Both the position numbers and the translations under genes were made by a program. This document shows positions 18,700-44,611 of a DNA stretch of 64,000 nucleotides, one piece after another. This DNA comes from Heptranchias perlo (lineage: Eukaryota). Under the pieces are notes generated by a model. The model was not told the DNA's origin. It saw only the letters and a list, made by a program, of their open reading frames with translations, and made no database searches. The stretch is taken from the NCBI RefSeq assembly GCF_035084215.1, contig NC_090338.1, positions 5,642,001-5,706,000 on the forward strand, written 5' to 3'. Numbering within the stretch: position 1 is the first letter of the stretch; each line of letters begins with the position of its first letter.

Positions 18700-19120
18700 C
18701 GTTCCCCTCATTGGGCAGCACCCTCGCCTCCGAGTCAGAAGGTCGTGGGTTCGAGTCCCCACTCCAGAGATTTGAGCACGTAATCCAGGCTGACAGTACT
18801 GAGGGAGCGCCGCGCTGTCGGAGGTGCCGTCTGTCGGATGAGACGTTAAACAGAAGCCCCGTCTGTCCTTTCAGGTGGACGTAAAAGATCCCATGGCACA
18901 ATTCAAAGAAGAGCATGGAAGTTCTCCCTGGTGTCCTGAGCCAATATTAATCCCTCAACTAACATCACTAAAAACAGGTCATCTGGTCATTTATCTCATT
19001 GCTGTTTGTGGGATCTTGCTGTGCACAAATTAGCTGCTGCGTTTCTTACATTACATCAGTACATTGGCTGCAAAGCAGTTTGGGAAGTTGTGAAGAGTGT
19101 TATATAAATTCAAGCCTTTC
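18700..19120 (+). mobile_element. tRNA-derived Deu-domain SINE
   Basis: B box GGTTCGAGTCC and the same core and tail as 5755-6190. Confidence 0.82.
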
Positions 19121-19281
19121 TATCCTATCCCACCCTATCCTTATCCCGACCTTGGTCCAGTTTTGGATTGTGTGAAAACGGGCAAACTTTAGGCAGGATG
19201 TCCATGGAAGGGCCTGACTTTTGGGGACATGTCTCCTCCCCCATGTCTTATATCACAATCCAACAGGTCACTGTTCAGAGA

Positions 19282-19352
19282 GGTACGGTAGCATAGTGGT
19301 CATGTCACTGGACCAGTAATCCAGAGTCATGAATTCAAATCCCACCACGGCA
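19282..19352 (+). promoter_or_regulatory. tRNA-derived type-2 Pol III internal promoter (A and B boxes), tRNA-Gln-like scaffold
   Basis: A box TAGCATAGTGG at 19289-19299; D stem GCAT/ATGT; perfect anticodon stem CTGGA/TCCAG (19308-19324) with a 7-nt loop; B-box-like AATTCAAATCC at ~19332-19342 with one mismatch. Acceptor and T stems do not pair, so it is not a functional tRNA. Confidence 0.8.
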
Positions 19353-19619
19353 GCTGGCGAATTTAAATTCAATTAATTAATTAAAATTCAATTAATTAAA
19401 TAAAAATCTGGAATTAAAATACTAGTATCAGTAATGATAGCCATGAAACTACCGGATTGTCGTAAAAACCCATCTGGTTCACGAATGCCCTTCAGGGAAG
19501 GAAACCTGCCGTCCTTACCCGGTCTGGCCGATATGTGACTCCAGACCCACAGCAATGTGGTTGATTCTTAATTGCCCTCTGAAATGGCCTAGCAAGACAC
19601 TCAGTTGTAAAATCTTGCT

Positions 19620-22600
19620 ATGAAAAGTCATAATAAGAATAAAACCGGACAGACCACTAGGCACCGGACACGACAACGGCAAAACACCAAGCCCAGTCGA
19701 CCCTGCAAGGCCCTCCTTACTAACATCTGGGGACTTGTGCCAAAATTGGGAGAGCTGTCCCACAAACGAGTCAAGCAACCGCCTGACAGAGCCGTACTCA
19801 CAGAATCATACCTTTCAGCCAACATCGCAGACTCTTCCATCACCATCCCTGGGTATGTCCTGTCCCACCGGCAGGACAGACCCACCAGAGGTGGCGGTAC
19901 AGTGATATACAGTCAGGAGGGAGTGGCCCTGGGAGTCCTCAATATTGACTCTGGACCCCATGAAATCTCATGGCATCAGGTCAAACATGGGCAAGGAAAC
20001 CTCCTGCTGATTACCACCTACCACGCTCCCTCAGCTGATGAATCAGTCCTCCTCCATGTTGAGCACCACTTGGAGGAAGCACTGAGGGTAGCAAGGGCAC
20101 AGAATGTACTCTGGGTGGGGGACTTCAATGTCCATCACCCAGAGTGGCTCGGTAGCACCACTGCTGGCCGAGTCCTGAAGGACATAGCTGCCAGACTGGG
20201 CCTGCGGCAGGTGGTGAGCGAACCAACACGAGGGAAAAACCTACTTGACTGCATCCTCACCAATCTACCTGTCGCAGATGCATCTGTCCATCACAGTATT
20301 GGTAGGAGTGACCATCACACAGTCCTCGTGGAGACGAAGTCCCGTCTTCGCACTGAGGACACCATCCAACGTGTTGTGTGGCACTACCACCGTGCTAAAT
20401 GGGATAGATTCAGAACAGATCTAGCAGCTCAAAACTGGGCATCCATGAGGCGCTGTGGGCCATCAGCAGCAGCAGAATTGTATTCCAGCACAATCTGTAA
20501 CCTCATGGCCCGGCATATTCCTCACTCTACCATTACCAACAAGCCAGGGGATCAACCCTGGTTCAATGAGGAATGTAGAAGAGCATGCCAGGAGCAGCAC
20601 CAGGCGTACCTAAAAATGAGGTGCCAACCTGGTGAAGCTACAACTCAGGACTACATGCATGCTAAACAGCGGAAGCAACATGCTATAGACAGAGCTAAGC
20701 GATTCCACAACCAACGGATCAGATCAAAGCTCTGCAGTCCTGCCACATCCAGTCGTGAATGGTGGTGGACAATTAAACAACTAACGGGAGGAGGAGGCTC
20801 TGCAAACATCCCCATTCTCAATGATGGCGGAGTCCAGCACGTGAGTGCAAAAGACAAGGCTGAAGCGTTTGCAACCATCTTCAGCCAGAAGTGTCGAGTG
20901 AATGATCCATCTCGGCCTCCTCCCGATATCCCCACCATCACGGAAGCCAGTCTTCAGCCAATTCGATTCACTCCACATGATATCAAGAAATGGCTGAGTG
21001 CACTGGACACAGCAAAGGCTATGGGCCCCGACAACATCCCAGCTGTAGTGCTGAAGACTTGTGCTCCAGAACTAGCCGTGCCTCTAGCCAAGCTGTTCCA
21101 GTAAAGCTACAACACTGGCATCTACCCGACAACGTGGAAAATTGCCCAGGTATGTCCTGTCCACAAAAAGCAGGACAAAGGGCAAAAGAGTAACTAGGGA
21201 GAGAGTAGGGCCTCTTAAGGATCAACAAGGTCATCTATGTGCGGAACCACAAGAGATGGGTGAGATCCTAAATGAATATTTCGCATCGGTATTTACGGTT
21301 GAGAAAGGCATGGATGTTAGGGAACTTGGGGAAATAAATAGTGATGTCTTGAGGAGTGTACATATTACAGAGAGGGAGGTGCTGGAAGTCTTAACGCGCA
21401 TCAAGGTAGATAAATCTCCGGGACCTGATGAAATGTATCCCAGGACGTTATGGGAGGTTAGGGAGGAAATTGCGGGTCCCATAGCAGAGATATTTGAATC
21501 ATCGACAGCTACAGGTGAGGTGCCTGAAGATTGGAGGGTAGCAAATGTTGTGCCTTTGTATAAGAAGGGCGGCAGGGAAAAGCCTGGGAACTACAGACCG
21601 GTGAGCCTGACATCTGTAGTGGGTAAGTTGTTAGAGGGTATTCTGAGAGACAGGATCGATAGGCATTTGGAGAGGCAGGGACTGATTAGGAACAGTCAGC
21701 GTGGTTTTGTGAGAGGAAAATCATGTCTCACAAATTTGATTGAGTTTTTTGAAGGGGTAACCAAGAAGATAGATGAGGGCTGTGCAGTAGACGTGGTCTA
21801 CATGGACTTTAGCAAAGCCTTTGACAAGGTACCGCATGGTAGGTTGTTACATAAGGTTAGATCTCACGGGATCCAAGGTGAGGTAGCCAATTGGATACAA
21901 AATTGGATTGACGGCAGAGAGTGGTTGTAGAGGGTTGTTTTTCAAACTGGAGGCCTGTGACCAGCGGTGTGCCTCAGGGATCGGTGCTGGGTCCGCTGTT
22001 ATTTGTTATTTATATTAATGATTTGGATGAGAATTTAGGAGGCATGGTTAGTAAGTTTGCAGATGACACCAAGATTGGTGGCATCGTGGACAGTGAAGAA
22101 GGTTATCTAGGATTGCAACGGGATCTTGATAAATTGGGCCAGTGGGCCGATGAATGGCAGATGGAGTTTAATTTAGATAAATGTGAGGTGATGCATTTTG
22201 GGAGATCGAATCGGGCCAGGACCTACTCCGTTAATGGTAGGGCGTTGGGGAGAGTTATAGAACAAAGAGATCTAGGAGTACAGGTTCATAGCTCCTTGAA
22301 AGTGGAGTCACAGGTGGATAGGGTGGTGAAGAAGGCATTCAGCATGCTTGGTTTCATTGGTCAGAACATTGAATACAGGAATTGGGATGTCTTGTTGAAG
22401 TTGTACAAGACATTAGTTAGGCCACACTTGGAATACTGTGTACAGTTCTGGTCACCCTATTATAGAAAGGATATTATTAAACTAGAAAGAGTGCAGAAAA
22501 GATTTACTAGGATGCTACCGGGACTTGATGGTTTGACTTATAGGGAGAGGTTGGATAGACTGAGACTTTTTTCCCTGGAGAGTAGGAGGTTTAGGGGTGA

Positions 22601-24291
22601 TCTTATAGAAGTCTATAAAATAATGAGGGGCATAGATAAGGTCGATAGTCAAAATCTTTTCCCAAAGGTAGGGGAGTCTATAACAAGGGGGCATAGATTT
22701 AAGGTGAGAGGGGAGAGATACAAAAGGGTCCAGAGGGGCAATTTTTTCACTCAAAGGGTGGTGAGTGTCTGGAACGAGCTGCCAGAGGCAGTAGTAGAGG
22801 CGGGTACAATTTTGTCTTTTAAAAAGCATTTGGACAGTTACATGGGTAAGATGGGTATAGAGGGATATGGGCCAAGTGCAGGCAATTGGGACTAGCTTAG
22901 TGGTATAAACTGGGCGACATGGACATGTTGGGCCGAAGGGCCTGTTTCCATGTTGTAAACTTCTATGATTCTAAATCCAATCCGGCCAATTACCGCCCCA
23001 TCAGTCTACTCTCAATCATCAGCAAAGTGATGGAAGGTGTCGTCGACAGTGCTATCAAGCGGCACTTACTCACTAATAACCTGCTCACCGATGCTCAGTT
23101 TGGGTTCCGCCAGGACCACTCGGCTCCAGACCTCATTACAGCCTTGGTCCAAACATGGACAAAAGAGCTGAATTCCAGAGGTGAGGTGAGAGTGACTGCC
23201 CTTGACATCAAGGCAGCATTTGACCGAGTGTGGCACCAAGGAGCCCAAGTAAAATTGAAGTCAATGGGAATCAGGGGGAAAACTCTCCAGTGGCTGGAGT
23301 CATACCTAGCACAAAGGAAGATGGTAGTGGTTGTTGGAGGCCAATCATCTCAGCTGCAGGAGTTCCCTAGGGCAGTGTCGTAGGCCCAACCATCTTCAGC
23401 TGCTTCATCAATGACCTTCCCTCCATCATAAGGTCAGAAATGGGGATGTTCGCTGATGACTGCACAGTGTTCAGTTCCATTCGCAACCCCTCAAATAATG
23501 AAGCAGTCCAAGCCCGCATGCAGCAAGACCTGGACAACATCCAGGCTTGGGCTGATAAGTGGCAAGTAACATTCGCGCCAGATAAGTGCCAGGCAATGAC
23601 CATCTCCAACAAGAGAGAGTCAAACCACCTCCCCTTGACATTCAACGGCATTACCATCGCCGAATCCCCCACCATCAACATCCTGGGGGTCACCATTGAC
23701 CAGAAACTTAACTGGACCAGCCATATAAATACTGTGGCTACGAGAGCAGGTCAGAGGCTGGGTATTCTGTGGCGAGTGACTCACCTCCTGACTCCCCAAA
23801 GCCTTTCCACCATCTACAAGGCACGAGTCAGGAGTGTGATGGAATACTCTCCACTTGCTTGGATGAGTGCAGCTCCAACAACACTCAGGAAGCTCGACAC
23901 CATCCAAGATAAAGCAGCCCGCTTGATTGGCACCCCATCCACCACCCTAAACATTCAATCCCTTCACCACCTGCGCACTGTGGCTGCAGTGTGTACCATC
24001 CACAGGATGCATTGCAGCAACTCGCCAAGGCTTCTTCGACAGCACCTCCCAAACCCGCGACCTCTACCACCTGGAAGGACAAGAGCAGCAGGCACATGGG
24101 AACAACACCACCTGCACGTTCCCCTTCAAGTCACACACCATCCCGACTTGGAAATATATCGCCGTTCCTTCATTGTCGCTGGGTCAAAATCCTGGAACTC
24201 CCTTCCTAACAGCACTGTGGGAGAACCGTCACCACACGGACTGCAGCGGTTCAAGAAGGCGGCTCACCACCACCTTCTCAAGGGCAATTAG
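19620..24291 (+). pseudogene. APE endonuclease-reverse transcriptase ORF (~960 aa when reconstructed)
   Basis: APE motifs TNIWGL, LTESYL, RGGG, GDFNVHH, PTRGKNLLD and SDHH; RT motifs NYRPISLLS, LDIKAAFDRVWH and FADD. Lesions: TAA at 21102 (TAC or CAC in sister copies), CR1 insert, and a 13-bp deletion near 23353. Confidence 0.93.
21180..22972 (+). mobile_element. Young 5'-truncated CR1 LINE nested in the single-ORF LINE
   Basis: [25 protein letters not shown] and FADDTK motifs; tail TTCTATGATTCT; host CAGGACAAA/TCCAATCC is split with an AAA duplication. Confidence 0.95.
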
Positions 24292-24604
24292 GGATGGGCA
24301 ATAAATGCTGGCCTCGCCAGTGACGCCCACGTCCCGTGAATGAATCAAAAAAAAGGATGTCCCCACATATCAGCAGCTCTCATCCACATGCTGTACCCAG
24401 TTTGCTTCACACTCTGTCTGCTTTTATATTAACTCCATTTGAGTCCTGTTTTGTAAAAAGTCCCTTTACAAATTATTTCATCACTACAGTTTTCTAACTC
24501 CCAGCCTGCCCAGAATCTATTCCTTTCCAGTCGAAGCCTATTCACTATCTCACAACAACATTACAGTACTTTTGTTTTCTCATTGCCCCCCAAAAACAGA
24601 TTGA

Positions 24605-26909: not shown

Positions 26910-27930
26910 AATGCTAAACAGCAGGAGCAGCATGCTATAGACAGAGCTAAGCGATCCCACAACCAACGGATCAGATCAAAACACTGCAGTCCTGCCACAT
27001 CCAGTTGTGAATGGTGGTGGACAATTAAACAAATAACAGGAGGAGGAGGCTCTGTGAACATCCCCATCCTCAATGATGGCAGAGTCCAGCACGCGAGTGA
27101 AAAAAACAAGGCTGAAGCGTTTGCAACCATCTTCAGCCAGAAGTGCCGAGTGGATGATCCATCTCGGCCTCCTCCCGATATCCCCACCATCACAGAAGCC
27201 AGTCTTCAGCCAATTCGATTCACTCCACGTGATATCAAGAAACGGCTGAGTGCACTGGATACAGCAAAAGCTATGGGCCCCGACAACATCCCGGCTGTAG
27301 TGCTGAAGACCTGTGCTCCAGAACTAGCTGCGCCTCTAGCCAAAATGTTCCAGCACAGCTACAACACTGGCATCTACCCCACAATGTGGAAAATTGCCCA
27401 GATATGTCCTGTCCACAAAAAGCAGGACAAATCCAATCCGGCCAATTACCGCCCCATCAGTCTACTCTCAATCATCAGCAAAGTGATGGAAGGTGTCGTC
27501 GACAGTGCTATCAAGCGGCACTTACTCACCAATAACCTGCTCACCGATACTCAGTTTGAGTTCCGCCAGGACCATTCGGCTCCAGACCTCATTACAGCCT
27601 TGGTCCAAACATGGACAAAAGAGCTGAATTCCAGAGGTGAGGTGAGAGTAACTGCCCTTGACATCAAGGCAGCATTTGACCGAGTGTGGCACCAAGAAGC
27701 CCTAGTAAAATTGAAGTCAATGGGAATCAGGGGGAAAACTCTCCAGTGGCTGGAGTCATACCTAGCAAAAAGGAAGATGGTAGTGGTTGTTGGAGGCCAA
27801 TCATCTCAGCCCCAGGACATTGCTGCAAGAGTTCCTCAGGGCAGTGTCCTAGGCCCAACCATCTTCAGCTGCTTCATCAATGATCTTCCCTCCATCATAA
27901 GGTCTGAAATGGGGATGTTCGCTGATGATT
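26910..27930 (+). mobile_element. Internal fragment of the single-ORF LINE family
   Basis: ORF 27054 onward is near-identical to the 19.3-kb element up to FADD. Confidence 0.93.
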
Positions 27931-30198
27931 TTTTAAAAATTCGTTCATGGGATGTGGGCATCGCTGGTGAGGCCGGCATTTATTGCCCATCCCTAATTGC
28001 CCTTGAGAAGGTGGTGGTGAGCTGCCTTCTTGAACCGCTGCAGTCCGTGTGGTAAAGGTTCTCCCACAGTGCTGTTAGGAAGGGGGTTCCAGGATTTTGA
28101 CCCAGCGACAATGAAGGAACGGCCGATATATTTCCAAGTCGGGATGGTGTGTGACTTGGAGAGGAATGTGCAGGTGGTGTTGTTCCCATGTGCCTGCTGC
28201 TCTTGTCCTTCTAGGTGGTGGAGGTCGCGGGTTTGGGAGGTGCTGATGAAGATGCCTTGGCGAGTTGCTGCAGTGCATCCTGTGGATGGTACACACTGCA
28301 GCCACAGTACGCCGGTGGTGAAGGGAATGAATGTTTAGTGTGGTGGATGGGGTGCCAATCAAGGGGGCTGCTTTGTCCTGGATGGTGTCGAGCTTCTTGA
28401 GTGTTGTTGGAGCTGCACTCATCCAGGCAAGTGGAGAGTATTCCATCACACTCCTGACTTGTGCCTTGTAGATGGTGGAATGGCTTTGGGGAGTTAGGAG
28501 GTGAGTCACTCACCGCAGAATACCCAGCCTCTGACCTGCTCTTGTAGCCACAGTATTTATGTGGCTGGTCCAGTTAAGTTTCTGGTCAATGGTGACCCCC
28601 AGGATGTTGATTGAGGGGGATTCGTCGATGGTAATGCTGTTGAATGTCAAGAGGAGGTGGTTAGACTCTGTCTTGTTGGAAATGGTCATTGCTTGGCACT
28701 TGTCTGGCGCAAATGTTACTTGTCACTTATCAGCCCAAGCCTGGATGTTGTCCAGGTTTTGCTGCATGTGGGCACGGACTGCTTCATTAGCTGAGGGGTT
28801 GCGAATGGAACTGAACACTGTGCAATCATCAGCGAACATCCCCACTTCTGACCTTATGATGGAGGGAAGGTCATTGATGAAGCAGCTGAGGATGGTTGGG
28901 CCTAGGACACTACCCTGAGGAACTCCTGCAGCAATGCCCTGGGGCTGAGCTGATTGGCCTCCAACAACCACTACCATCTTCCTTTGTGCTAGGTATGACT
29001 CCAGCCACTGGAGAGTTTTCCCTCTGATTCCCATTGACTTCAATTTTATTCGGGCTCCTTGGTGCCACACTCGGTCAAATGCTGCCTTAATGTCAAGGGC
29101 AGTCACTCTCACCTCACCTCTGGAATTCAGCTCTTTTGTCCATGTTTGGACCAAGGCTGTAATGAGGTCTGGAGCCGAGTGGTCCTGACGGAACCCAAAC
29201 TGAGCATCGGTGAGCAGGTTATTGGTGAGTAAGTGCCGCTTGATAGCACTGTCGACGACACCTTCCATCACTTTGCTGATGATTGAGAGTAGGCTGATGG
29301 GGGGTAATTGGCTGGATTGGATTTGTCCTGCTTTTTGTGGACAGGAACAGAGAGATCTGGGGGTATATGTACACAAATCATTGAAGCTCTGCAGTCTTGC
29401 CACATCCAGTCGTGAATGGTGGTGGACAATTAAACAACTAACGGGAGGAGGAGGCTCTGTAAACATCCCCATCCTCAATGAAGGCGGAGTCCAGCACATG
29501 AGTGCAAAAGACAAGGCTGAAATGTTTGCAACCATCTTCAGCCAGAAGTACCGAGTGGATGATCCATCTCGGCCTCCTCCCAATGTTCGCTGATGATTGC
29601 ACAGTGTTCAGTTCCATTCGCAACCCCTCAGCTAATAAAGCAGTCCGTGCCCGCATGCAGCTAGACCTGGACAACATCCAGGCTTGGGCTGATAAGTGAC
29701 AAGTAACATTTGCGCCAGACAAGTGCCAAGCAATGACCATTTCCAACAAGACAGAGTCTAACCACCTCCTCTTGACATAACTGGGCAATTTTCCACATTG
29801 TCAGATAGATGCCAGTGTTGTCGCTGTACTGGAATAGGCTAAGGCGCAGCAAGTTCTGGAGCACAAGTCTTCAGCACTACAGCCGGCATGTTGTCAGGGC
29901 CCATAGCCTTTGCTGTATCCAGTGCACTCAGCCGTTTCTTGATATCACGTGGAGTGAATCGAATTGGCTGAAGACTGGCTTCTGTGATGGTGGGGATATC
30001 GGGAGGAGGCCGAGATGGATCATCCACTCGGCACTTCTGGCTGAAGATGGTTGCAAACATTTCAGCCTTGTCTTTTGCACTCATGTGCTGGACTACGCCT
30101 TCATTGAGGATGGGGGCGTTTACAGAGCCTCCTCCTCCCGTTAGTTGTTTAATTGTCCACCACCATTCACGACTGGATGTGGCAAGACTGCAGAGCTT
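27927..30198 (-). mobile_element. 5'-truncated single-ORF LINE copy with a templated patch at ~29344-29775
   Basis: Reverse-complement homology from the 3' tail (27927) to AAGCTCTGCAG (30198). Confidence 0.9.
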
Positions 30199-39993: not shown

Positions 39994-40414
39994 ACCAATA
40001 TTTGTGTCATCGACAAACCTCGATATGTGGCTCTCTATTGTGTTATCTAAGTCATTAATAAATATAGTGAATAGTTGAGGCCCCAGCACAGAACCTTGTG
40101 GGACACCACTAGTCACTTCCTTCCAATTCGAATATATACCCATTATCCCTAATCTCTGTCTTCTACCACCTAACCAATCTCCTAACCAGGTCAATAATTT
40201 GCCTTCAATTCCATAAGCTTTAATTTTAGCTAACAGTCTCTTAAGTGAAATCTTATCAAATGCCTTCTGGTAGTCCATATAAACTACATCCATAGATATT
40301 CCCCTGTCTACTACTTTAGTTACTTCCTCAAAAAATTCAATTAGGTTTGTTAGACATGACCTACCCCTTATAAATCCATGTTGGCTCTCTCTAATCAGCT
40401 CAAATTTCTCCACA

Positions 40415-41817
40415 TCCAATCCGGCCAATTACCGCCCCATCAGTCTACTCTCAATCATCAGCAAAGTGATGGAAGGTGTCGTCGACAGTGCTATCAAGCG
40501 GCACTTACTCACCAATAACCTGCTCACCGATGCTCAGTTTGGGTTCCGCCAGGACCACTCGGCTCCAGACCTCATTACAGCCTTGGTCCAAACATGGACA
40601 AAAGAGCTGAATTCAAGAGGTGAGGTGAGAGTGACTGCCCTTGACATCAAGGCAGCATTTGACCGAGTGTGGCACCAAGGAGCCCTAGTAAAATTGAAGT
40701 CAATGGGAATCAGGGGGAAAACTCTCCAGTGGCTGGAGTCATACCTTGCACAAAGGAAGATGGTAGTGGTTGTTGGAGGCCAATCATCTCAGCCCCAGGG
40801 CATTGCTGCAGGAGTTCCTCAGGGCAGTGTCCTTGGCCCAACCATCTTCAGCTGCTTCATCAATGACCTTCCCTCCATCATAAGGTCAGAAATGGGGATG
40901 TTCGCTGATGACTGCACAGTGTTCAGTTCCATTCGCAACCCCTCAGATAATGAAGCAGTCCGAGCCTGCATGCAGCAAGACCTGGACAACATCCAGGCTT
41001 GGGCTCATAAGTGGCAAGTAACATTCGCGCCAGATAAGTGCCAGGCAATGACCATCTCCAACAAGAGAGAGTCTAACCACCTCCCCTTGACATTCAACGG
41101 CATTACCATCGCCGAATCCCCCACCATCAACATCCTGGGGGTCACCATTGACCAGAAACTTAACTGGACCAGCCATATAAATACTGTGGCTACGAGAGCA
41201 GGTCAGAGGCTGGGTATTCTGCGGCGAGTGACTCACCTCCTGACTCCCCAAAGCCTTTCCACCATCTACAAGGCACAAGTCAGGAGTGTGATGGAATACT
41301 CTCCACTTGCCTGGATGAGTGCAGCTCCAACAACACTCAAGAAGCTCGACACCATCCAAGATAAAGCAGCCCGCTTGATTGGCACCCCATCCACCACCCT
41401 AAACATTCACTCCCTTCACCACCGGCGCACTGTGGCTGCAGTGTGCACCATCCACAGGATGCACTGCAGCAACTCGCCAAGGCTTCTTCGACAGCACCTC
41501 ACAAACCCGCGACCTCTACCACCTAGAAGGACAAGGGCAGCAGGCACATGGGAACAACACCATCTGCACGTTCCCCTCCAAGTCACACACCATCCCGACT
41601 TGGAAATATATCGCCGTTCCTTCATTGTCGCTGGGTCAAAATCCTGGAACTCCCTTCCTAACAGCACTGTGGGAGAACCGTCACCACACGGACTGCAGCG
41701 GTTCAAGAAGGCGGCTCACCACCACCTTCTCGTGGGCAATTAGGGATGGGCAATAAATGCCGGCCTTGCCAGCGACGCCCACATCCCGTGAACGAATAAA
41801 AAAAAAATAAAAAAAAA
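40415..41817 (+). mobile_element. 5'-truncated single-ORF LINE copy with open RT frame and A tail
   Basis: 425-aa ORF 40466-41743; ACAT duplicated at the flanks. Confidence 0.95.
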
Positions 41818-42799: not shown

Positions 42800-44611
42800 A
42801 GTGAATGGTGGTGGACAATTAAACAACTAACGGGAGGAGGAGGCTCTGTAAATATCCCGATCATCAATGATGGCGGAGTCCAGCAAGTGAGTGCAAAAGA
42901 CAAGGCTGAAGTGTTTGCAACCATCTTCAGCCAGAAGTGTTGAGTGGATGATCCATCTCGGCCTCCTGTCGATATCCCCACCATCACAGAAGCCAATCTT
43001 CAGCCAGTTCGATTCACTCCACGTGATATCAAGAAACGGCTGAGTGCACTGGATACAGCAAAGGCTATGGGCCCCGACAACATCCCAGCTGTAGTGCTGC
43101 AGACTTGTGCCCCAGAACTAGCCGCGCCTCGAGCCAAGCTGTTCCAGTACAGCTACAACACTGGCATCTACCTGACAATGTGGAAAATTGCCCAGGTATG
43201 TCCTGTCCACAAAAAGCAGGACAAATCCAATCCGGCCAATTACTGCCCCATCAGTCTACTCTCAATCATCAGCAAAGTGATGGAAGGTGACGTCGACAGT
43301 GTTATCAAGCGGCACTTACTCACCAATAACCTGCTCACCGATGCTCAGTTTGGGTTCCACCAGGACCACTCGGCTCCAGACCTCATTACAGCCTTGGTCC
43401 AAACAAAAGAGCTAAATTCCAGAGGTGAGGTGAGAGTGACTGCCCTTGACATCAAGGCAGCATTTGATTGAGTGTGGCACCAAGGAGCCCCAGTAAAATT
43501 GAAGTCAATGGGAATAAGGGGGAAAACTCTCCAGTGGCTGGAGTCATACCTAGCACAAAGGAAGATGGTAGTGATTGTTGGAGGCCAATCATCTCAGCCC
43601 CAGGGCATTGCTGCAGGAGTTCCTCAGGGCAGTGTCCTAGGCCCAACCATCTTCAGCTGCTTCATCAATGACCTTCCCTCCATCATAAGGTCAGAAATGG
43701 AGATGTTCGCTGATGATTGCACAGTGTTCAGTTCCATTCGCAACCCCTCAGTTAATGAAGCAGTCTGTGCCCGTATGCAGCAAGACTTGGACAACATCCA
43801 GGCTTGGGCTGATAAGTGACAAGTAACATTCACGCCAGACAAGTGCCAGGCAATGACCATCTCCAACAAGAGAAAGTCAAACCACCTCCCCTTGACATTC
43901 AACGGCATTACCATCGCCGAATCCCCCACCATCAACATCCTGGGGGTCACCATTGACCAGAAACTTAACTGGACCAGCCACATAAATACTGTGGCTACGA
44001 GAGCAGGTCAGAGGCTGGGTATTCTGTGGTGAGTGACTCACCTCCTGACTCCCCAAAGCCTTTCCACCATCTACAAGGCACAAGTCAGGAGTGTGATGGA
44101 ATACTCTCCACTTGCCTGGATGAGTGCAGCTCCAACAACACTCAAGAAGCTCGACACCATCCAGGACAAAGCAGCCCGCTTGATTGGCACCCCATCCACC
44201 ACCCTAAACATTCACTCCCTTCACCACCGGCGCACTGTGGCTGCAGTGTGTACCATCCACAGGATGCACTGCAGCAACTCGCCAAGGCTTCTTCGACAGC
44301 ACCTCTCAAACCCGTGACCTCTACCACCTAGAAGGACAAGGGCAGCAGGCGCATGGGAACAACACCACCTGTATGTTCCCCTCCAAGTCACACACCATCC
44401 CGACTTGGAAATATATCGTCGTTCCTTCATCGTTGCTGGGTCAAAATCCTGGAACTCCCTTCCTGACAGCACTGTGGGAGAACCTTCACCACACGGACTG
44501 CAGCGGTTCAAGAAGGCGGCTCACCACCACCTTCTCAAGGGCAAATAGGGATGGGCAATAAATGCCGGCCTTGCCAGCGATGCCCACATCCCATGAACGA
44601 ATAATAAAAAA
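42800..44611 (+). mobile_element. 5'-truncated single-ORF LINE copy with nonsense lesions
   Basis: Collinear with 20755-24354 minus the CR1 insert. Confidence 0.94.

What the first reader, a model, noticed from the sequence alone, without database searches (positions are those of the whole stretch)
19282..24354. Candidate Pol III-transcribed, protein-coding LINE: tRNA head, no ORF1, no TTTT on the sense strand
Seen: the element opens with a tRNA-like A/B-box head, followed by a ~270-nt leader and a single APE-RT ORF (ATG 19620), leaving no room for ORF1. Scanning by eye, the ~3.3 kb of element sequence (19282-21179 plus 22973-24354) has no T4+ run and only about six TTT, versus roughly 20 A4+ runs. 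Sister copies 40415-41817 and 42800-44611 also show none. The 1.8-kb CR1 nested inside it has about nine T4+ runs, a built-in control. The first TTTT appears in the flank at 24422, ~70 nt past the A tail. Established: vertebrate Pol III terminates at T4+, tRNA heads drive SINEs, and LINEs normally use Pol II and in the CR1/L2 group usually carry ORF1. Inference: this is an autonomous SINE-LINE hybrid whose coding sequence is purged of Pol III terminators, implying translation of an uncapped Pol III RNA. I cannot confirm novelty without a database search.
Basis: partly seen in the sequence, partly recalled or inferred. Interest (0 to 1): 0.92.

Follow-up and report, generated by a model that had tools for sequence, protein, structure and literature searches.

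The report
Shark LINE carrying a SINE-type tRNA head
This is a dead, full-length copy of a very abundant shark jumping gene that encodes its own copying enzyme yet begins with the kind of tRNA-like promoter normally seen only on short non-coding SINEs, and whose coding strand avoids the T-runs that stop RNA polymerase III; this hints at, but does not prove, an unusual way of being transcribed.

Summary
Without a nested CR1-like insert (21180-22972), 19282-24354 is a 3,280-nt element: tRNA-like head, AT-rich spacer, SINE core, one APE-RT reading frame and an A tail. The sense strand has 0 T4+ runs, 6 T3+ and 21 A4+.

The head is probably the family's own 5' end. In contigs of three organisms the repeat starts sharply at about 19280, and head, spacer and ORF start have depths of the same order.

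T-run loss goes beyond codon usage. T3+ is 5 against 12.6 expected (P=0.0007), while A, C and G runs and 35 CR1-like control ORFs fit expectation. T4+=0 alone is weak (P=0.09).

Of 17 subfamily or species variants, 11 are synonymous, so the ORF evolved under selection.

New here: 2 of 5 tails in the window read AATAAA, about 38 nt, T5, A-run, the layout of Pol III "T+" SINEs.

"No ORF1" is ordinary for L2 LINEs. Pol III transcription and translation of an uncapped RNA are untested. This copy is broken.

The scan's first readers noted the same architecture on other DNA of this genome: 63 unchecked notes. Ten paper searches found no description.

The parts
19282..19349 (+). tRNA-derived, SINE-type head. 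A-box-like 19289-19299, intact 5-bp anticodon-like stem with a 7-nt loop, B-box-like 19332-19342.
   Evidence: Rfam tRNA match 19288-19346, 14.7 bits, below the gathering score of 29. ARAGORN calls none. Summed contig depth jumps from 69-195 to 6.6x10^5 at the 19280 bin. The box consensus sequences are recalled, not from a call.
19350..19440 (+). AT-rich spacer (79% A+T) with no T4; absent from some shorter SINE-like forms.
   Evidence: Composition and run counts. Joints that skip it: 19324>19453, 19326>19494, 19352>19549, 19419>19533, 19405>19521. Its depth is comparable to that of the ORF start in X1, X5 and X16.
19441..19610 (+). Conserved SINE core shared with far more abundant SINEs. Probably the Deu-type body of SacSINE1-like SINEs; that name is inferred, not tested.
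   Evidence: Depth is roughly 10 to 200 times that of the spacer and ORF-start bins in organisms B and F. Loose ends at 19583 and 19606 run straight into the element's own 3' tail; loose ends at 19609 run into an A-rich end.
19620..21179 (+). 5' part of the single ORF: basic N-terminus of about 30 aa, APE endonuclease, linker. In-frame stop at 21102-21104.
   Evidence: ORF list. Pfam Exo_endo_phos_2 E = 5.5e-11. 11 of 17 diagnostic variants are synonymous.
21180..22972 (+). Nested CR1-like LINE fragment, same orientation, inserted between two codons. Not part of the element; serves as a built-in control.
   Evidence: RVT_1 hits. T4+ = 9. T runs fit the codon shuffle: 30 against 30.6 and 9 against 9.4.
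22973..24291 (+). 3' part of the ORF (reverse transcriptase and C-terminal region). Frameshift near 23354, stop at 23368-23370, natural stop at 24289-24291.
   Evidence: Three-frame translation. RVT_1 hits.
24279..24346 (+). 3' tail shared with the partner SINEs. AATAAA at 24300-24305; predicted hairpin at 24291-24335.
   Evidence: The loose-end consensus in X16 equals 24279-24308. The tail is conserved in 4 aligned tails. The fold is not better than shuffles, z = -0.75.
24347..24354 (+). A8 tail. In 2 of 5 tails in the window a T5 sits between the conserved end and the A run; not in this copy.

Best explanation
19282-24354 is a full-length, now inactivated copy of a very abundant shark L2-type LINE with a single APE-RT ORF.

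Its own 5' 340 nt is the 5' part of a tRNA-derived SINE (head, spacer, conserved core). Its last 70-odd nt is the tail that the partner SINEs carry. So the family has the layout of a SINE with a LINE ORF between body and tail.

Shown:
- this anatomy;
- a repeat boundary at the head's first bases;
- purifying selection on the ORF;
- a T-run avoidance that codon usage does not explain.

Inferred origin: a SINE 5' part was fused to a LINE lacking ORF1, for example by template switching, and the fusion then amplified.

Inferred mechanism:
- TFIIIC and Pol III start at the head's +1 (about 19282) from the internal A and B boxes.
- Pol III reads through 3.3 kb because T runs have been purged.
- In at least some lineages it stops at a T run placed just after the tail, and the RNA is polyadenylated through the conserved AAUAAA, as in T+ SINEs.
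- The RNA serves as the template for target-primed reverse transcription through the shared tail. Either it, or rarer Pol II read-through RNAs, is translated into the APE-RT protein.
For: (1) Anatomy and counts.

(2) Family-level 5' end. In X1, summed depth is 69 in the flank (19160-19239) and 6.6x10^5 to 2.5x10^6 over head and spacer. It is 1.4-2.0x10^6 over the ORF start and 3.6-5.4x10^6 over the APE region. In organisms B and F the spacer (2.9x10^4 to 1.1x10^5; 1.9-2.7x10^4) and the leader/ORF junction (7.6x10^4; 6.2x10^4) are of one order, while the core is in the millions.

(3) Partner SINEs join the core directly to this element's tail (loose ends at 19583 and 19606).

(4) T-specific run avoidance:
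- T3+ 5 against 12.6 (P = 0.0007) and T4+ 0 against 2.0 (P = 0.09), with A, C and G runs normal;
- codon junctions xxT|TTx 0 against 5.6 and xTT|Txx 2 against 5.8;
- Phe TTT:TTC 3:16 against 190:301 for other NNY codons (P = 0.05);
- 35 CR1-like control ORF fragments, 17.7 kb: T3+ 288 against 282 and T4+ 82 against 81;
- 8 further 5'-truncated copies, 6,754 nt: T4+ = 0.

(5) ORF under selection: 11 of 17 diagnostic variants are synonymous, 12 at codon position 3, where 0.20-0.34 is expected (binomial P = 0.003-0.009).

(6) 2 of 5 tails read AATAAA, about 38 nt, T5, A6-8. This is the T+ SINE layout described in PMC12101331 (abstract and passages).

(7) In L1 assays, Pol III transcripts need ORF2p only, while a Pol II-driven Alu also needs ORF1p (abstract of PMC2666806).

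(8) Unchecked leads: 63 first-reader notes on other pieces of this genome describe the same element. The 13 distinct listed notes that give a single element's length put it at 2.5-3.4 kb, nine of them at 3,267-3,367 nt.
Against: - No direct evidence for the polymerase. All four runs laid were short contigs, which cannot show RNA starts.
- No contig spans head to ORF, so that linkage outside this copy rests on depth and on unchecked notes.
- The head is only weakly tRNA-like (14.7 bits; ARAGORN none). The B box fits at 8 of 11 in this copy.
- T4+ = 0 alone is P = 0.09.
- 3.3 kb is far longer than known Pol III units.
- The leader has 8 upstream ATGs, and an uncapped RNA should translate poorly.
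- AATAAA followed by an A tail also fits ordinary Pol II cleavage and polyadenylation. Only 2 of 5 tails have the T5, and this copy does not.
- In X19 (guessed to be RNA), 5 contigs read from differing flanks into the head at 19282, which means read-through RNA or DNA.
- A 9-nt match to the 3' flank lies 78 nt upstream of the head (19195-19203 against 24354-24362; chance roughly 0.01). If it is a true target-site duplication, this copy's template began upstream of the head.
Confidence: 0.5

Rival explanations
1. Same SINE-headed LINE family, but transcribed by Pol II. Transcription would come from an internal promoter in the head, spacer and core, as in L1 or jockey-type 5' UTRs, or by read-through from host genes. 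The head would be a fossil of the fusion or a Pol II regulatory module. T-run avoidance would serve another end, for example avoiding U-rich downstream elements that would trigger premature polyadenylation at internal AAUAAA-like sites.
For: - Conserved AATAAA 41 nt before the A tail.
- Variable A tails.
- The ORF is under selection and needs translation, which favours capped RNA.
- Contigs of a putative RNA run read from flanks into the head.
- The B box fits at 8 of 11; the leader has 8 upstream ATGs.
- Possible target-site duplication 78 nt upstream of the head.
Against: - The head must lie inside the transcript to be copied, so any Pol II promoter must act from downstream of its own start. 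An A box at +8 to +18 with a B box 43 nt on is the canonical Pol III type 2 layout.
- The depletion is specific to T runs and is absent from 35 CR1-like control ORFs.
- There are only 3 AATAAA and 4 ATTAAA sites in 3,280 nt, 5 of the 7 in the first 140 nt of the leader, so there is little to protect.
- A T5 placed exactly at the 3' end in 2 of 5 tails has no role for Pol II.
Confidence: 0.3
2. The headed form is in effect a very long SINE. Pol III RNA from it is only a template. The protein comes in trans from a rarer conventional Pol II-driven L2 master, or from copies lying inside host mRNAs. The headed copies' ORFs are then passengers.
For: - L2-type proteins recognise the 3' tail and mobilise SINEs in trans; the tail is shared with SINEs.
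- In L1 assays, Pol III RNAs need only ORF2p (abstract of PMC2666806).
- This avoids having to translate an uncapped RNA with 8 upstream ATGs.
Against: - No alternative 5' UTR appears among the loose ends shown at the ORF start, though 3,435 more were not shown.
- Head and spacer depth is one seventh to two thirds of APE depth in X1, which is too high for a side branch.
- Purifying selection on the ORF and synonymous-level T-run avoidance show that coding and T-run constraints act on the same sequence.
Confidence: 0.12
3. Chance adjacency or a one-off chimera. A SINE happens to lie, or was joined once, in front of a 5'-truncated LINE at this locus only.
For: - No second head or leader exists in this 64-kb window, while 8 headless fragments do.
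- One-off chimeras of small RNAs with L1 are known (abstract of 10.1101/2025.02.02.635956).
Against: - Spacer, leader/ORF junction and ORF start are each present at roughly 10^4 times single-copy depth in X1, and are present in two other organisms.
- The ORF starts 30 aa before the APE domain with no truncated remnant.
- 63 unchecked notes report the same element elsewhere in this genome, at about 3.3 kb in most of the notes listed.
Confidence: 0.03

Closest known systems
Single-ORF L2-clade LINEs (zebrafish ZfL2-2, eel UnaL2) and their tail-sharing SINEs
   Same: One APE-RT ORF and no ORF1. A 3' tail shared with partner SINEs. The size class of about 3.3 kb is my recollection. Single-ORF L2 sub-clades and ORF1p-less ZfL2-2 retrotransposition come from passages of 10.1101/788562 and PMC3880073.
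   Different: Those elements are not reported to begin with a tRNA-like head, and the assays drove them from a CMV Pol II promoter. Here the 5' 340 nt is a SINE 5' part and the sense strand avoids T runs. RT-based placement in the L2 clade was not tested here.
tRNA-headed conserved-core SINEs with an L2-type tail (SacSINE1 / LmeSINE1)
   Same: tRNA-related head with A and B boxes, a conserved body, and a tail homologous to an L2 LINE (L2-2_CM). They are present in sharks, chimaera and coelacanth (PMC5499810 abstract and section 7). The SINE forms seen join this element's core to this element's tail.
   Different: SINEs are 100-600 nt and non-coding. This element carries about 2.9 kb of selected coding sequence between body and tail. 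Luchetti et al. report LINE homology only at the tail. I could not compare sequences with SacSINE1 or the Deu domain because no reference was on hand, and their supplementary alignments were not opened.
T+ SINEs (for example mouse B2): AATAAA, a Pol III terminator, then an A tail
   Same: 2 of 5 tails here read AATAAA, about 38 nt, T5, A6-8. That is the order described for T+ SINEs, whose Pol III transcripts are polyadenylated in an AAUAAA-dependent way (PMC12101331).
   Different: That mechanism is described for mammalian short non-coding SINEs. Here it would sit on a 3.3-kb coding element in a shark. The T run is missing in 3 of 5 tails, including this copy. The distance from signal to T run (about 38 nt) looks long to me (recalled, not compared in any call).
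Small-RNA/LINE chimeric retrocopies (U6/L1 type) and bipartite LINE-derived SINEs (Bov-tA model)
   Same: A small-RNA-derived 5' part joined to LINE sequence, thought to arise by template switching (abstract of 10.1101/2025.02.02.635956; PMC5786205 Discussion).
   Different: Those chimeras are one-off dead copies or non-coding SINEs. Kojima found LINE 5' regions in SINE bodies only for RTE and Vingi, and states that SINEs cannot encode a protein. Here the fusion keeps an intact-type ORF and has amplified massively.
LINEs that borrow another polymerase's transcription unit (R2 in 28S rDNA; Tx1-clade elements in snRNA or other small-RNA genes)
   Same: Precedent for LINE RNA not made from a Pol II promoter of its own (PMC5786205 Discussion; PMC4494074 passages).
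   Different: Those depend on inserting into a host gene, with a ribozyme to cut the 5' end in R2. Here the promoter-like head travels inside the element and insertions are dispersed.

Membership tests
L2-clade LINE (single-ORF, tail-recognising type) | APE endonuclease and reverse transcriptase in one ORF | tested here: met
   Exo_endo_phos_2 (5.5e-11) and RVT_1 (3.7e-17, 9.7e-07) on pieces of one frame that continues across the nested insert.
L2-clade LINE (single-ORF, tail-recognising type) | RT phylogeny places it inside the L2 clade | not tested
   No reference L2 or CR1 sequences were on hand. The assignment rests on the tail relation SacSINE1 / L2-2_CM in PMC5499810 and on a recalled TGAA-like 3' motif.
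L2-clade LINE (single-ORF, tail-recognising type) | 3' tail shared with partner SINEs | tested here: met
   Loose ends at 19583 and 19606 in X16 continue with 24279-24308 of this element.
tRNA-derived SINE (SINE2) | tRNA-derived head with A and B boxes at the 5' end | tested here: inconclusive
   A box 11 of 11, B box 8 of 11 (recalled consensus), spacing 43 nt. Rfam tRNA 14.7 bits, below 29. ARAGORN finds 0.
tRNA-derived SINE (SINE2) | Short (about 100-600 nt) and non-coding | tested here: not met
   3,280 nt with an APE-RT ORF of about 960 codons that is under purifying selection.
tRNA-derived SINE (SINE2) | Deu-type conserved body | not testable with these tools
   No Deu or SacSINE1 reference sequence was available. 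Only the very high cross-species abundance of 19441-19610 is shown.
Pol III type 2 transcription unit | No T4+ run between start and intended end | tested here: met
   0 T4+ in 3,280 nt, and 0 in 6,754 nt of other copies.
Pol III type 2 transcription unit | Terminator (T4 or longer) at the 3' end | tested here: inconclusive
   T5 directly after the tail in 2 of 5 tails. It is absent in this copy, whose next TTTT is 68 nt downstream.
Pol III type 2 transcription unit | Actual transcription by Pol III (occupancy, inhibitor profile, 5'-triphosphate start at +1) | not testable with these tools
   Only contigs were served, with no read starts.
One-off small-RNA/LINE chimeric retrocopy | Single or few independent copies with a 5'-truncated dead LINE part | tested here: not met
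   Spacer, junction and ORF start are at about 10^4 times single-copy depth and are present in three organisms.

The most novel reading that the evidence does not exclude
An autonomous retrotransposon that carries and uses an internal Pol III promoter: a protein-coding "SINE".
- TFIIIC and Pol III would make a 3.3-kb RNA from a T-run-purged template.
- The RNA would end at a terminal T run and be polyadenylated through AAUAAA.
- It would be both the retrotransposition template and, uncapped, the mRNA for APE-RT.

As a corollary, the abundant tRNA-core-L2-tail SINEs of cartilaginous fishes would be internal-deletion derivatives of, or the donors to, this element. That would give a conserved SINE body a LINE counterpart outside RTE and Vingi.
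Probability: 0.4. Interest if true: 0.95.

Novelty: new variant of a known kind. Interest (0 to 1): 0.8.

Why it matters
LINEs are taken to be Pol II elements and SINEs to be Pol III elements that cannot code. Kojima states both points in the Discussion of PMC5786205.

A family with roughly 10^4 head-bearing copies blurs that division. It has a SINE head and body, a selected APE-RT ORF and a T-run-purged coding strand.

If Pol III really drives it:
- Pol III would be shown to make a multi-kilobase mRNA in a vertebrate.
- The lack of ORF1 would tie in with the L1 result that Pol III RNAs need only ORF2p.
- There would be a natural system for studying translation of uncapped Pol III RNA.
- It would bear on where conserved SINE bodies come from.

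Even if Pol II drives it, a LINE that captured a SINE 5' end and then out-amplified its relatives is a new route of LINE promoter replacement.

Tried and rejected
1. Other full-length copies.
- The search for related loci in metagenome contigs gave 19 pattern matches, none confirmed. Viral contigs gave nothing.
- The window holds no second head or leader, even with 7-nt words.
- So head-to-ORF linkage in other copies was not seen on one molecule.

2. RNA starts. All 24 runs offered were Logan contigs. Table 6 lists no start or end places, so transcription start could not be tested.

3. Target-site duplications.
- No convincing anchored duplication for 4 copies. The best was 13 of 16 for the copy at 40414 (P = 0.025 over 30 offsets).
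- The 9-nt match 78 nt upstream of the head stays unresolved.

4. RNase P or tRNA-like processing as the head's role. Set aside because no acceptor stem is present and the T arm is broken in the Rfam alignment.

5. Structured leader or IRES. The 359-nt fold is only mildly better than shuffles (z = -2.0), and the tail hairpin is not (z = -0.75). Nothing is claimed from either.

6. Protein hits. All 12 are fragments or host-gene fusions, best from Heptranchias perlo (87-95% identity). None covers the N-terminus, so conservation of the ATG at 19620 was not tested. Some notes elsewhere describe copies without an AUG.

7. Literature. Ten searches found no paper describing a LINE with a tRNA-type head or a Pol III-driven LINE.
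- Repbase and Dfam could not be searched.
- Ogiwara 1999 and Nishihara 2006 were not readable (for the latter) and are cited only as other papers cite them.
- Supplementary files were not opened. Those of PMC5499810 (SINE/L2-2_CM alignments) and PMC5786205 could bear on whether the 5' homology was seen before.
- Translation of Pol III-made mRNAs and non-canonical Pol III terminators are recalled from memory, with no paper seen.

Full report
WHAT IS THERE

Taking out a nested CR1-like fragment (21180-22972, same strand, inserted exactly between two codons), 19282-24354 is one 3,280-nt element. In order:
- A tRNA-like head (19282 to about 19349).
- An AT-rich spacer (to about 19440).
- A conserved core (to about 19610).
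- An ATG at 19620 opening a frame that carries an APE endonuclease (Pfam Exo_endo_phos_2, 5.5e-11) and a reverse transcriptase (RVT_1) and ends at 24289-24291.
- A 3' tail with AATAAA at 24300-24305.
- An A8 run (24347-24354).

The copy is dead. It has an in-frame stop at 21102-21104, a frameshift near 23354 and a stop at 23368-23370. The longest ORF in the leader is 34 aa, so there is no ORF1.

The best protein relatives are fragments annotated in Heptranchias perlo (87-95% identity). Weaker ones come from Heterodontus francisci and Pristiophorus japonicus. The window is therefore probably from a sevengill shark or a close relative.

They are right: T4+ = 0, T3+ = 6 and A4+ = 21 in the element. 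The nested CR1-like insert has 9 T4+. The first flank TTTT is at 24422.

The head is only weakly tRNA-like by models: ARAGORN finds none, and Rfam tRNA scores 14.7 bits against a gathering score of 29. However, 19289-19299 fits the A-box consensus as I recall it at 11 of 11 positions, at +8 to +18 of the element. The anticodon-like arm is intact. 19332-19342 fits the recalled B-box at 8 of 11 positions, 43 nt further on.

IS THE T-RUN ABSENCE MORE THAN CHANCE?

T4+ = 0 on its own is weak: P = 0.009 under a mononucleotide shuffle, but 0.09 under dinucleotide and synonymous-codon shuffles.

The stronger signal is at T3+. There are 5 runs against 12.6 +/- 2.6 expected when synonymous codons are permuted (P = 0.0007). 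A, C and G runs of 3+ and 4+ all sit at expectation.

The loss lies at codon junctions: xxT|TTx 0 against 5.6, and xTT|Txx 2 against 5.8. Phe TTT:TTC is 3:16 against 190:301 for the other NNY pairs (P = 0.05).

Controls from the same window show no such effect:
- The nested CR1-like ORF has T3+ 30 against 30.6 and T4+ 9 against 9.4.
- 35 CR1-like ORF fragments (17.7 kb) have T3+ 288 against 282 and T4+ 82 against 81.

Eight other 5'-truncated copies of the family (6,754 nt, sense strand) have no T4+. They share ancestry, so they are not independent tests.

IS THE HEAD PART OF THE FAMILY?

The window cannot answer this.

I therefore laid contigs of four runs on 19080-20279. In X1 (organism A, probably the source) the summed depths are:
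- 69 in the flank (19160-19239);
- 6.6x10^5 in the bin starting at 19280;
- 1.5-2.5x10^6 over the rest of the head and the spacer;
- 3.9-5.8x10^6 over the core;
- 1.4-2.0x10^6 over the ORF start;
- 3.6-5.4x10^6 over the APE region.

The tool warns that summed depth is not a copy number. Even so, the boundary at about 19280 is sharp, and head and spacer are within a factor of about three of the ORF start.

In organisms B (X5) and F (X16):
- the spacer is at 2.9x10^4 to 1.1x10^5 (B) and 1.9-2.7x10^4 (F);
- the leader/ORF junction is at 7.6x10^4 (B) and 6.2x10^4 (F), the same order;
- the core is at 0.7-1.9x10^6 (B) and 1.2-4.0x10^6 (F).

So the core is shared with much more abundant SINEs, while the spacer tracks the LINE. 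No contig spans head to ORF; pieces are about 100-300 nt. Linkage on one molecule is therefore shown only for this copy.

The scan's first readers, on other pieces of this genome, wrote 63 notes fitting "tRNA head APE-RT". Of the 13 distinct listed notes that give a single element's length, nine put it at 3,267-3,367 nt, against 3,280 here; four others give 2,513, 3,100, 3,274 and 3,281 nt. These are unchecked leads, not evidence, but they agree.

RELATION TO SINES

- Loose ends in X16 at 19583 and 19606 run from the core straight into 24279-24308, this element's own tail.
- Loose ends at 19609 in X5 and X16 run into an A-rich end just where the LINE's ATG region lies.
- Several joints skip the spacer.

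So shorter forms exist that are head/core plus tail. The LINE looks like such a SINE with an ORF between body and tail.

This matches the published picture of SacSINE1/LmeSINE1: tRNA head, Deu body, and a tail shared with L2-2_CM (PMC5499810, abstract and section 7). Those authors report LINE homology at the tail only. I could not test that the core is the Deu domain.

Kojima's survey found LINE 5' regions in SINE bodies only for RTE and Vingi, and found no LINE counterpart for the conserved bodies (PMC5786205, abstract and Discussion).

I infer that a SINE 5' part was fused to an ORF1-less L2. Conserved SINE bodies are older and more widespread than this family, and the first 30 codons (A-rich, rich in K and N) resemble a decayed A-rich SINE end. 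The opposite direction, SINEs arising as deletion derivatives, is not excluded.

IS THE ORF FUNCTIONAL IN THE LINEAGE?

One search lists 28 variants inside 19620-20279.
- 17 differ between subfamilies or species. Of these, 11 are synonymous and 12 lie at codon position 3. The expected synonymous share is 0.20-0.34 (binomial P = 0.003-0.009).
- 11 are places where this copy departs from the majority in all three DNA runs. Only 1 is synonymous, as expected for decay after insertion.
- 65 further variants were not shown by the tool.

A NEW POINT AT THE 3' END

Five tails of the family lie in the window. In two of them a sense-strand T5 sits between the conserved end and an A6-8 run: the copy ending near 27939 (minus strand, 93% identical over the tail) and an older one near 59766 (minus strand, 90% over 90 nt; 78% over the longer match). 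The conserved AATAAA lies about 38 nt upstream.

This order is the one described for mammalian T+ SINEs, where Pol III stops in the T run and the RNA is then polyadenylated in an AAUAAA-dependent way (PMC12101331, abstract and passages). The other three tails, including this copy, go straight from the conserved end into A-rich sequence.

HOW IT MOST LIKELY WORKS

Shown:
- a SINE-headed, single-ORF LINE family;
- very abundant, and present in at least three organisms;
- an ORF under selection;
- specific avoidance of T runs.

Inferred: transcription from the head's internal promoter by Pol III, read-through made possible by the purge of T runs, 3' end formation of the T+ type in at least some lineages, and reverse transcription primed through the shared tail.

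The field uses internal oligo-T as the argument against Pol III (PMC4494074 passages). Here that argument is absent rather than met. The lack of ORF1 fits the L1 result that Pol III RNAs need only ORF2p (PMC2666806 abstract). But it is also simply normal for several L2 sub-clades.

Against the Pol III reading:
- there is no direct evidence on the polymerase;
- the B box is imperfect;
- 3.3 kb is long for Pol III;
- the leader has 8 upstream ATGs, 7 in the ORF's frame;
- AATAAA followed by an A tail fits Pol II as well;
- in the putative RNA run, contigs run from differing flanks into the head (5 loose ends at 19282);
- there is a possible 9-nt target-site duplication 78 nt upstream of the head.

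I put the Pol III mechanism at about 0.45-0.5, a Pol II or read-through version of the same family at 0.3, a template-only "long SINE" at about 0.1, and chance adjacency at about 0.03.

NOVELTY

Ten full-text searches found no description of a LINE with a tRNA-type head or of a Pol III-driven LINE. Repbase and Dfam could not be searched, paper supplements were closed, and two key older papers were not readable.

I rate it a new variant of a known kind (L2 LINE plus SINE 5' module). It would be categorically new if Pol III transcription is shown.

The same thing has been noted many times by this scan on other DNA of this genome, so its interest belongs to the family and not to this particular, broken, copy.

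Noticed in passing
window 27925-27945 (minus strand) and 59735-59766 (minus strand): Two of the five family tails in the window end with the conserved tail, then T5, then A6-8, with AATAAA about 38 nt upstream. This is the T+ SINE-like order. The other three tails lack the T run.
   Followed up: partly
window 40414 against 21179/22973: The 5'-truncated copy at 40414 begins within 1-2 nt of the point where the CR1-like element is nested in the full-length copy. Its upstream flank is not the CR1 tail. This may be a hotspot or a coincidence.
   Followed up: partly
window 19195-19203 and 24354-24362: A 9-nt exact match between the sequence directly after the A tail and a site 78 nt upstream of the head (chance roughly 0.01). 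If it is a real target-site duplication, 78 extra nt belong to the insertion.
   Followed up: partly
window 26911-30198: A cluster of family fragments in alternating orientation: 26911-27928 (+), 27939-29346 (-), 29384-29778 (+, two pieces), 29774-30198 (-). It looks like inversion or twin-priming-type rearrangement, or nested insertions.
   Followed up: no
window 19302-19586: Seven of the eight upstream ATGs in the leader are in the same frame as the main ORF, each closed by a stop.
   Followed up: no
window 19080-20279 in runs X5-X18: Organisms B to F hold 31-35% of the sampled 31-mers of this stretch, so the family is nearly identical across several species. The region 19640-19679 is by far the least conserved part in B and F.
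   Followed up: partly
whole window: 35 ORF fragments of diverse CR1-like LINEs (37-98% aa identity to the nested one). The window is largely LINE debris. Another repeat ends near 19120 (depth about 1,000 in X1).
   Followed up: no
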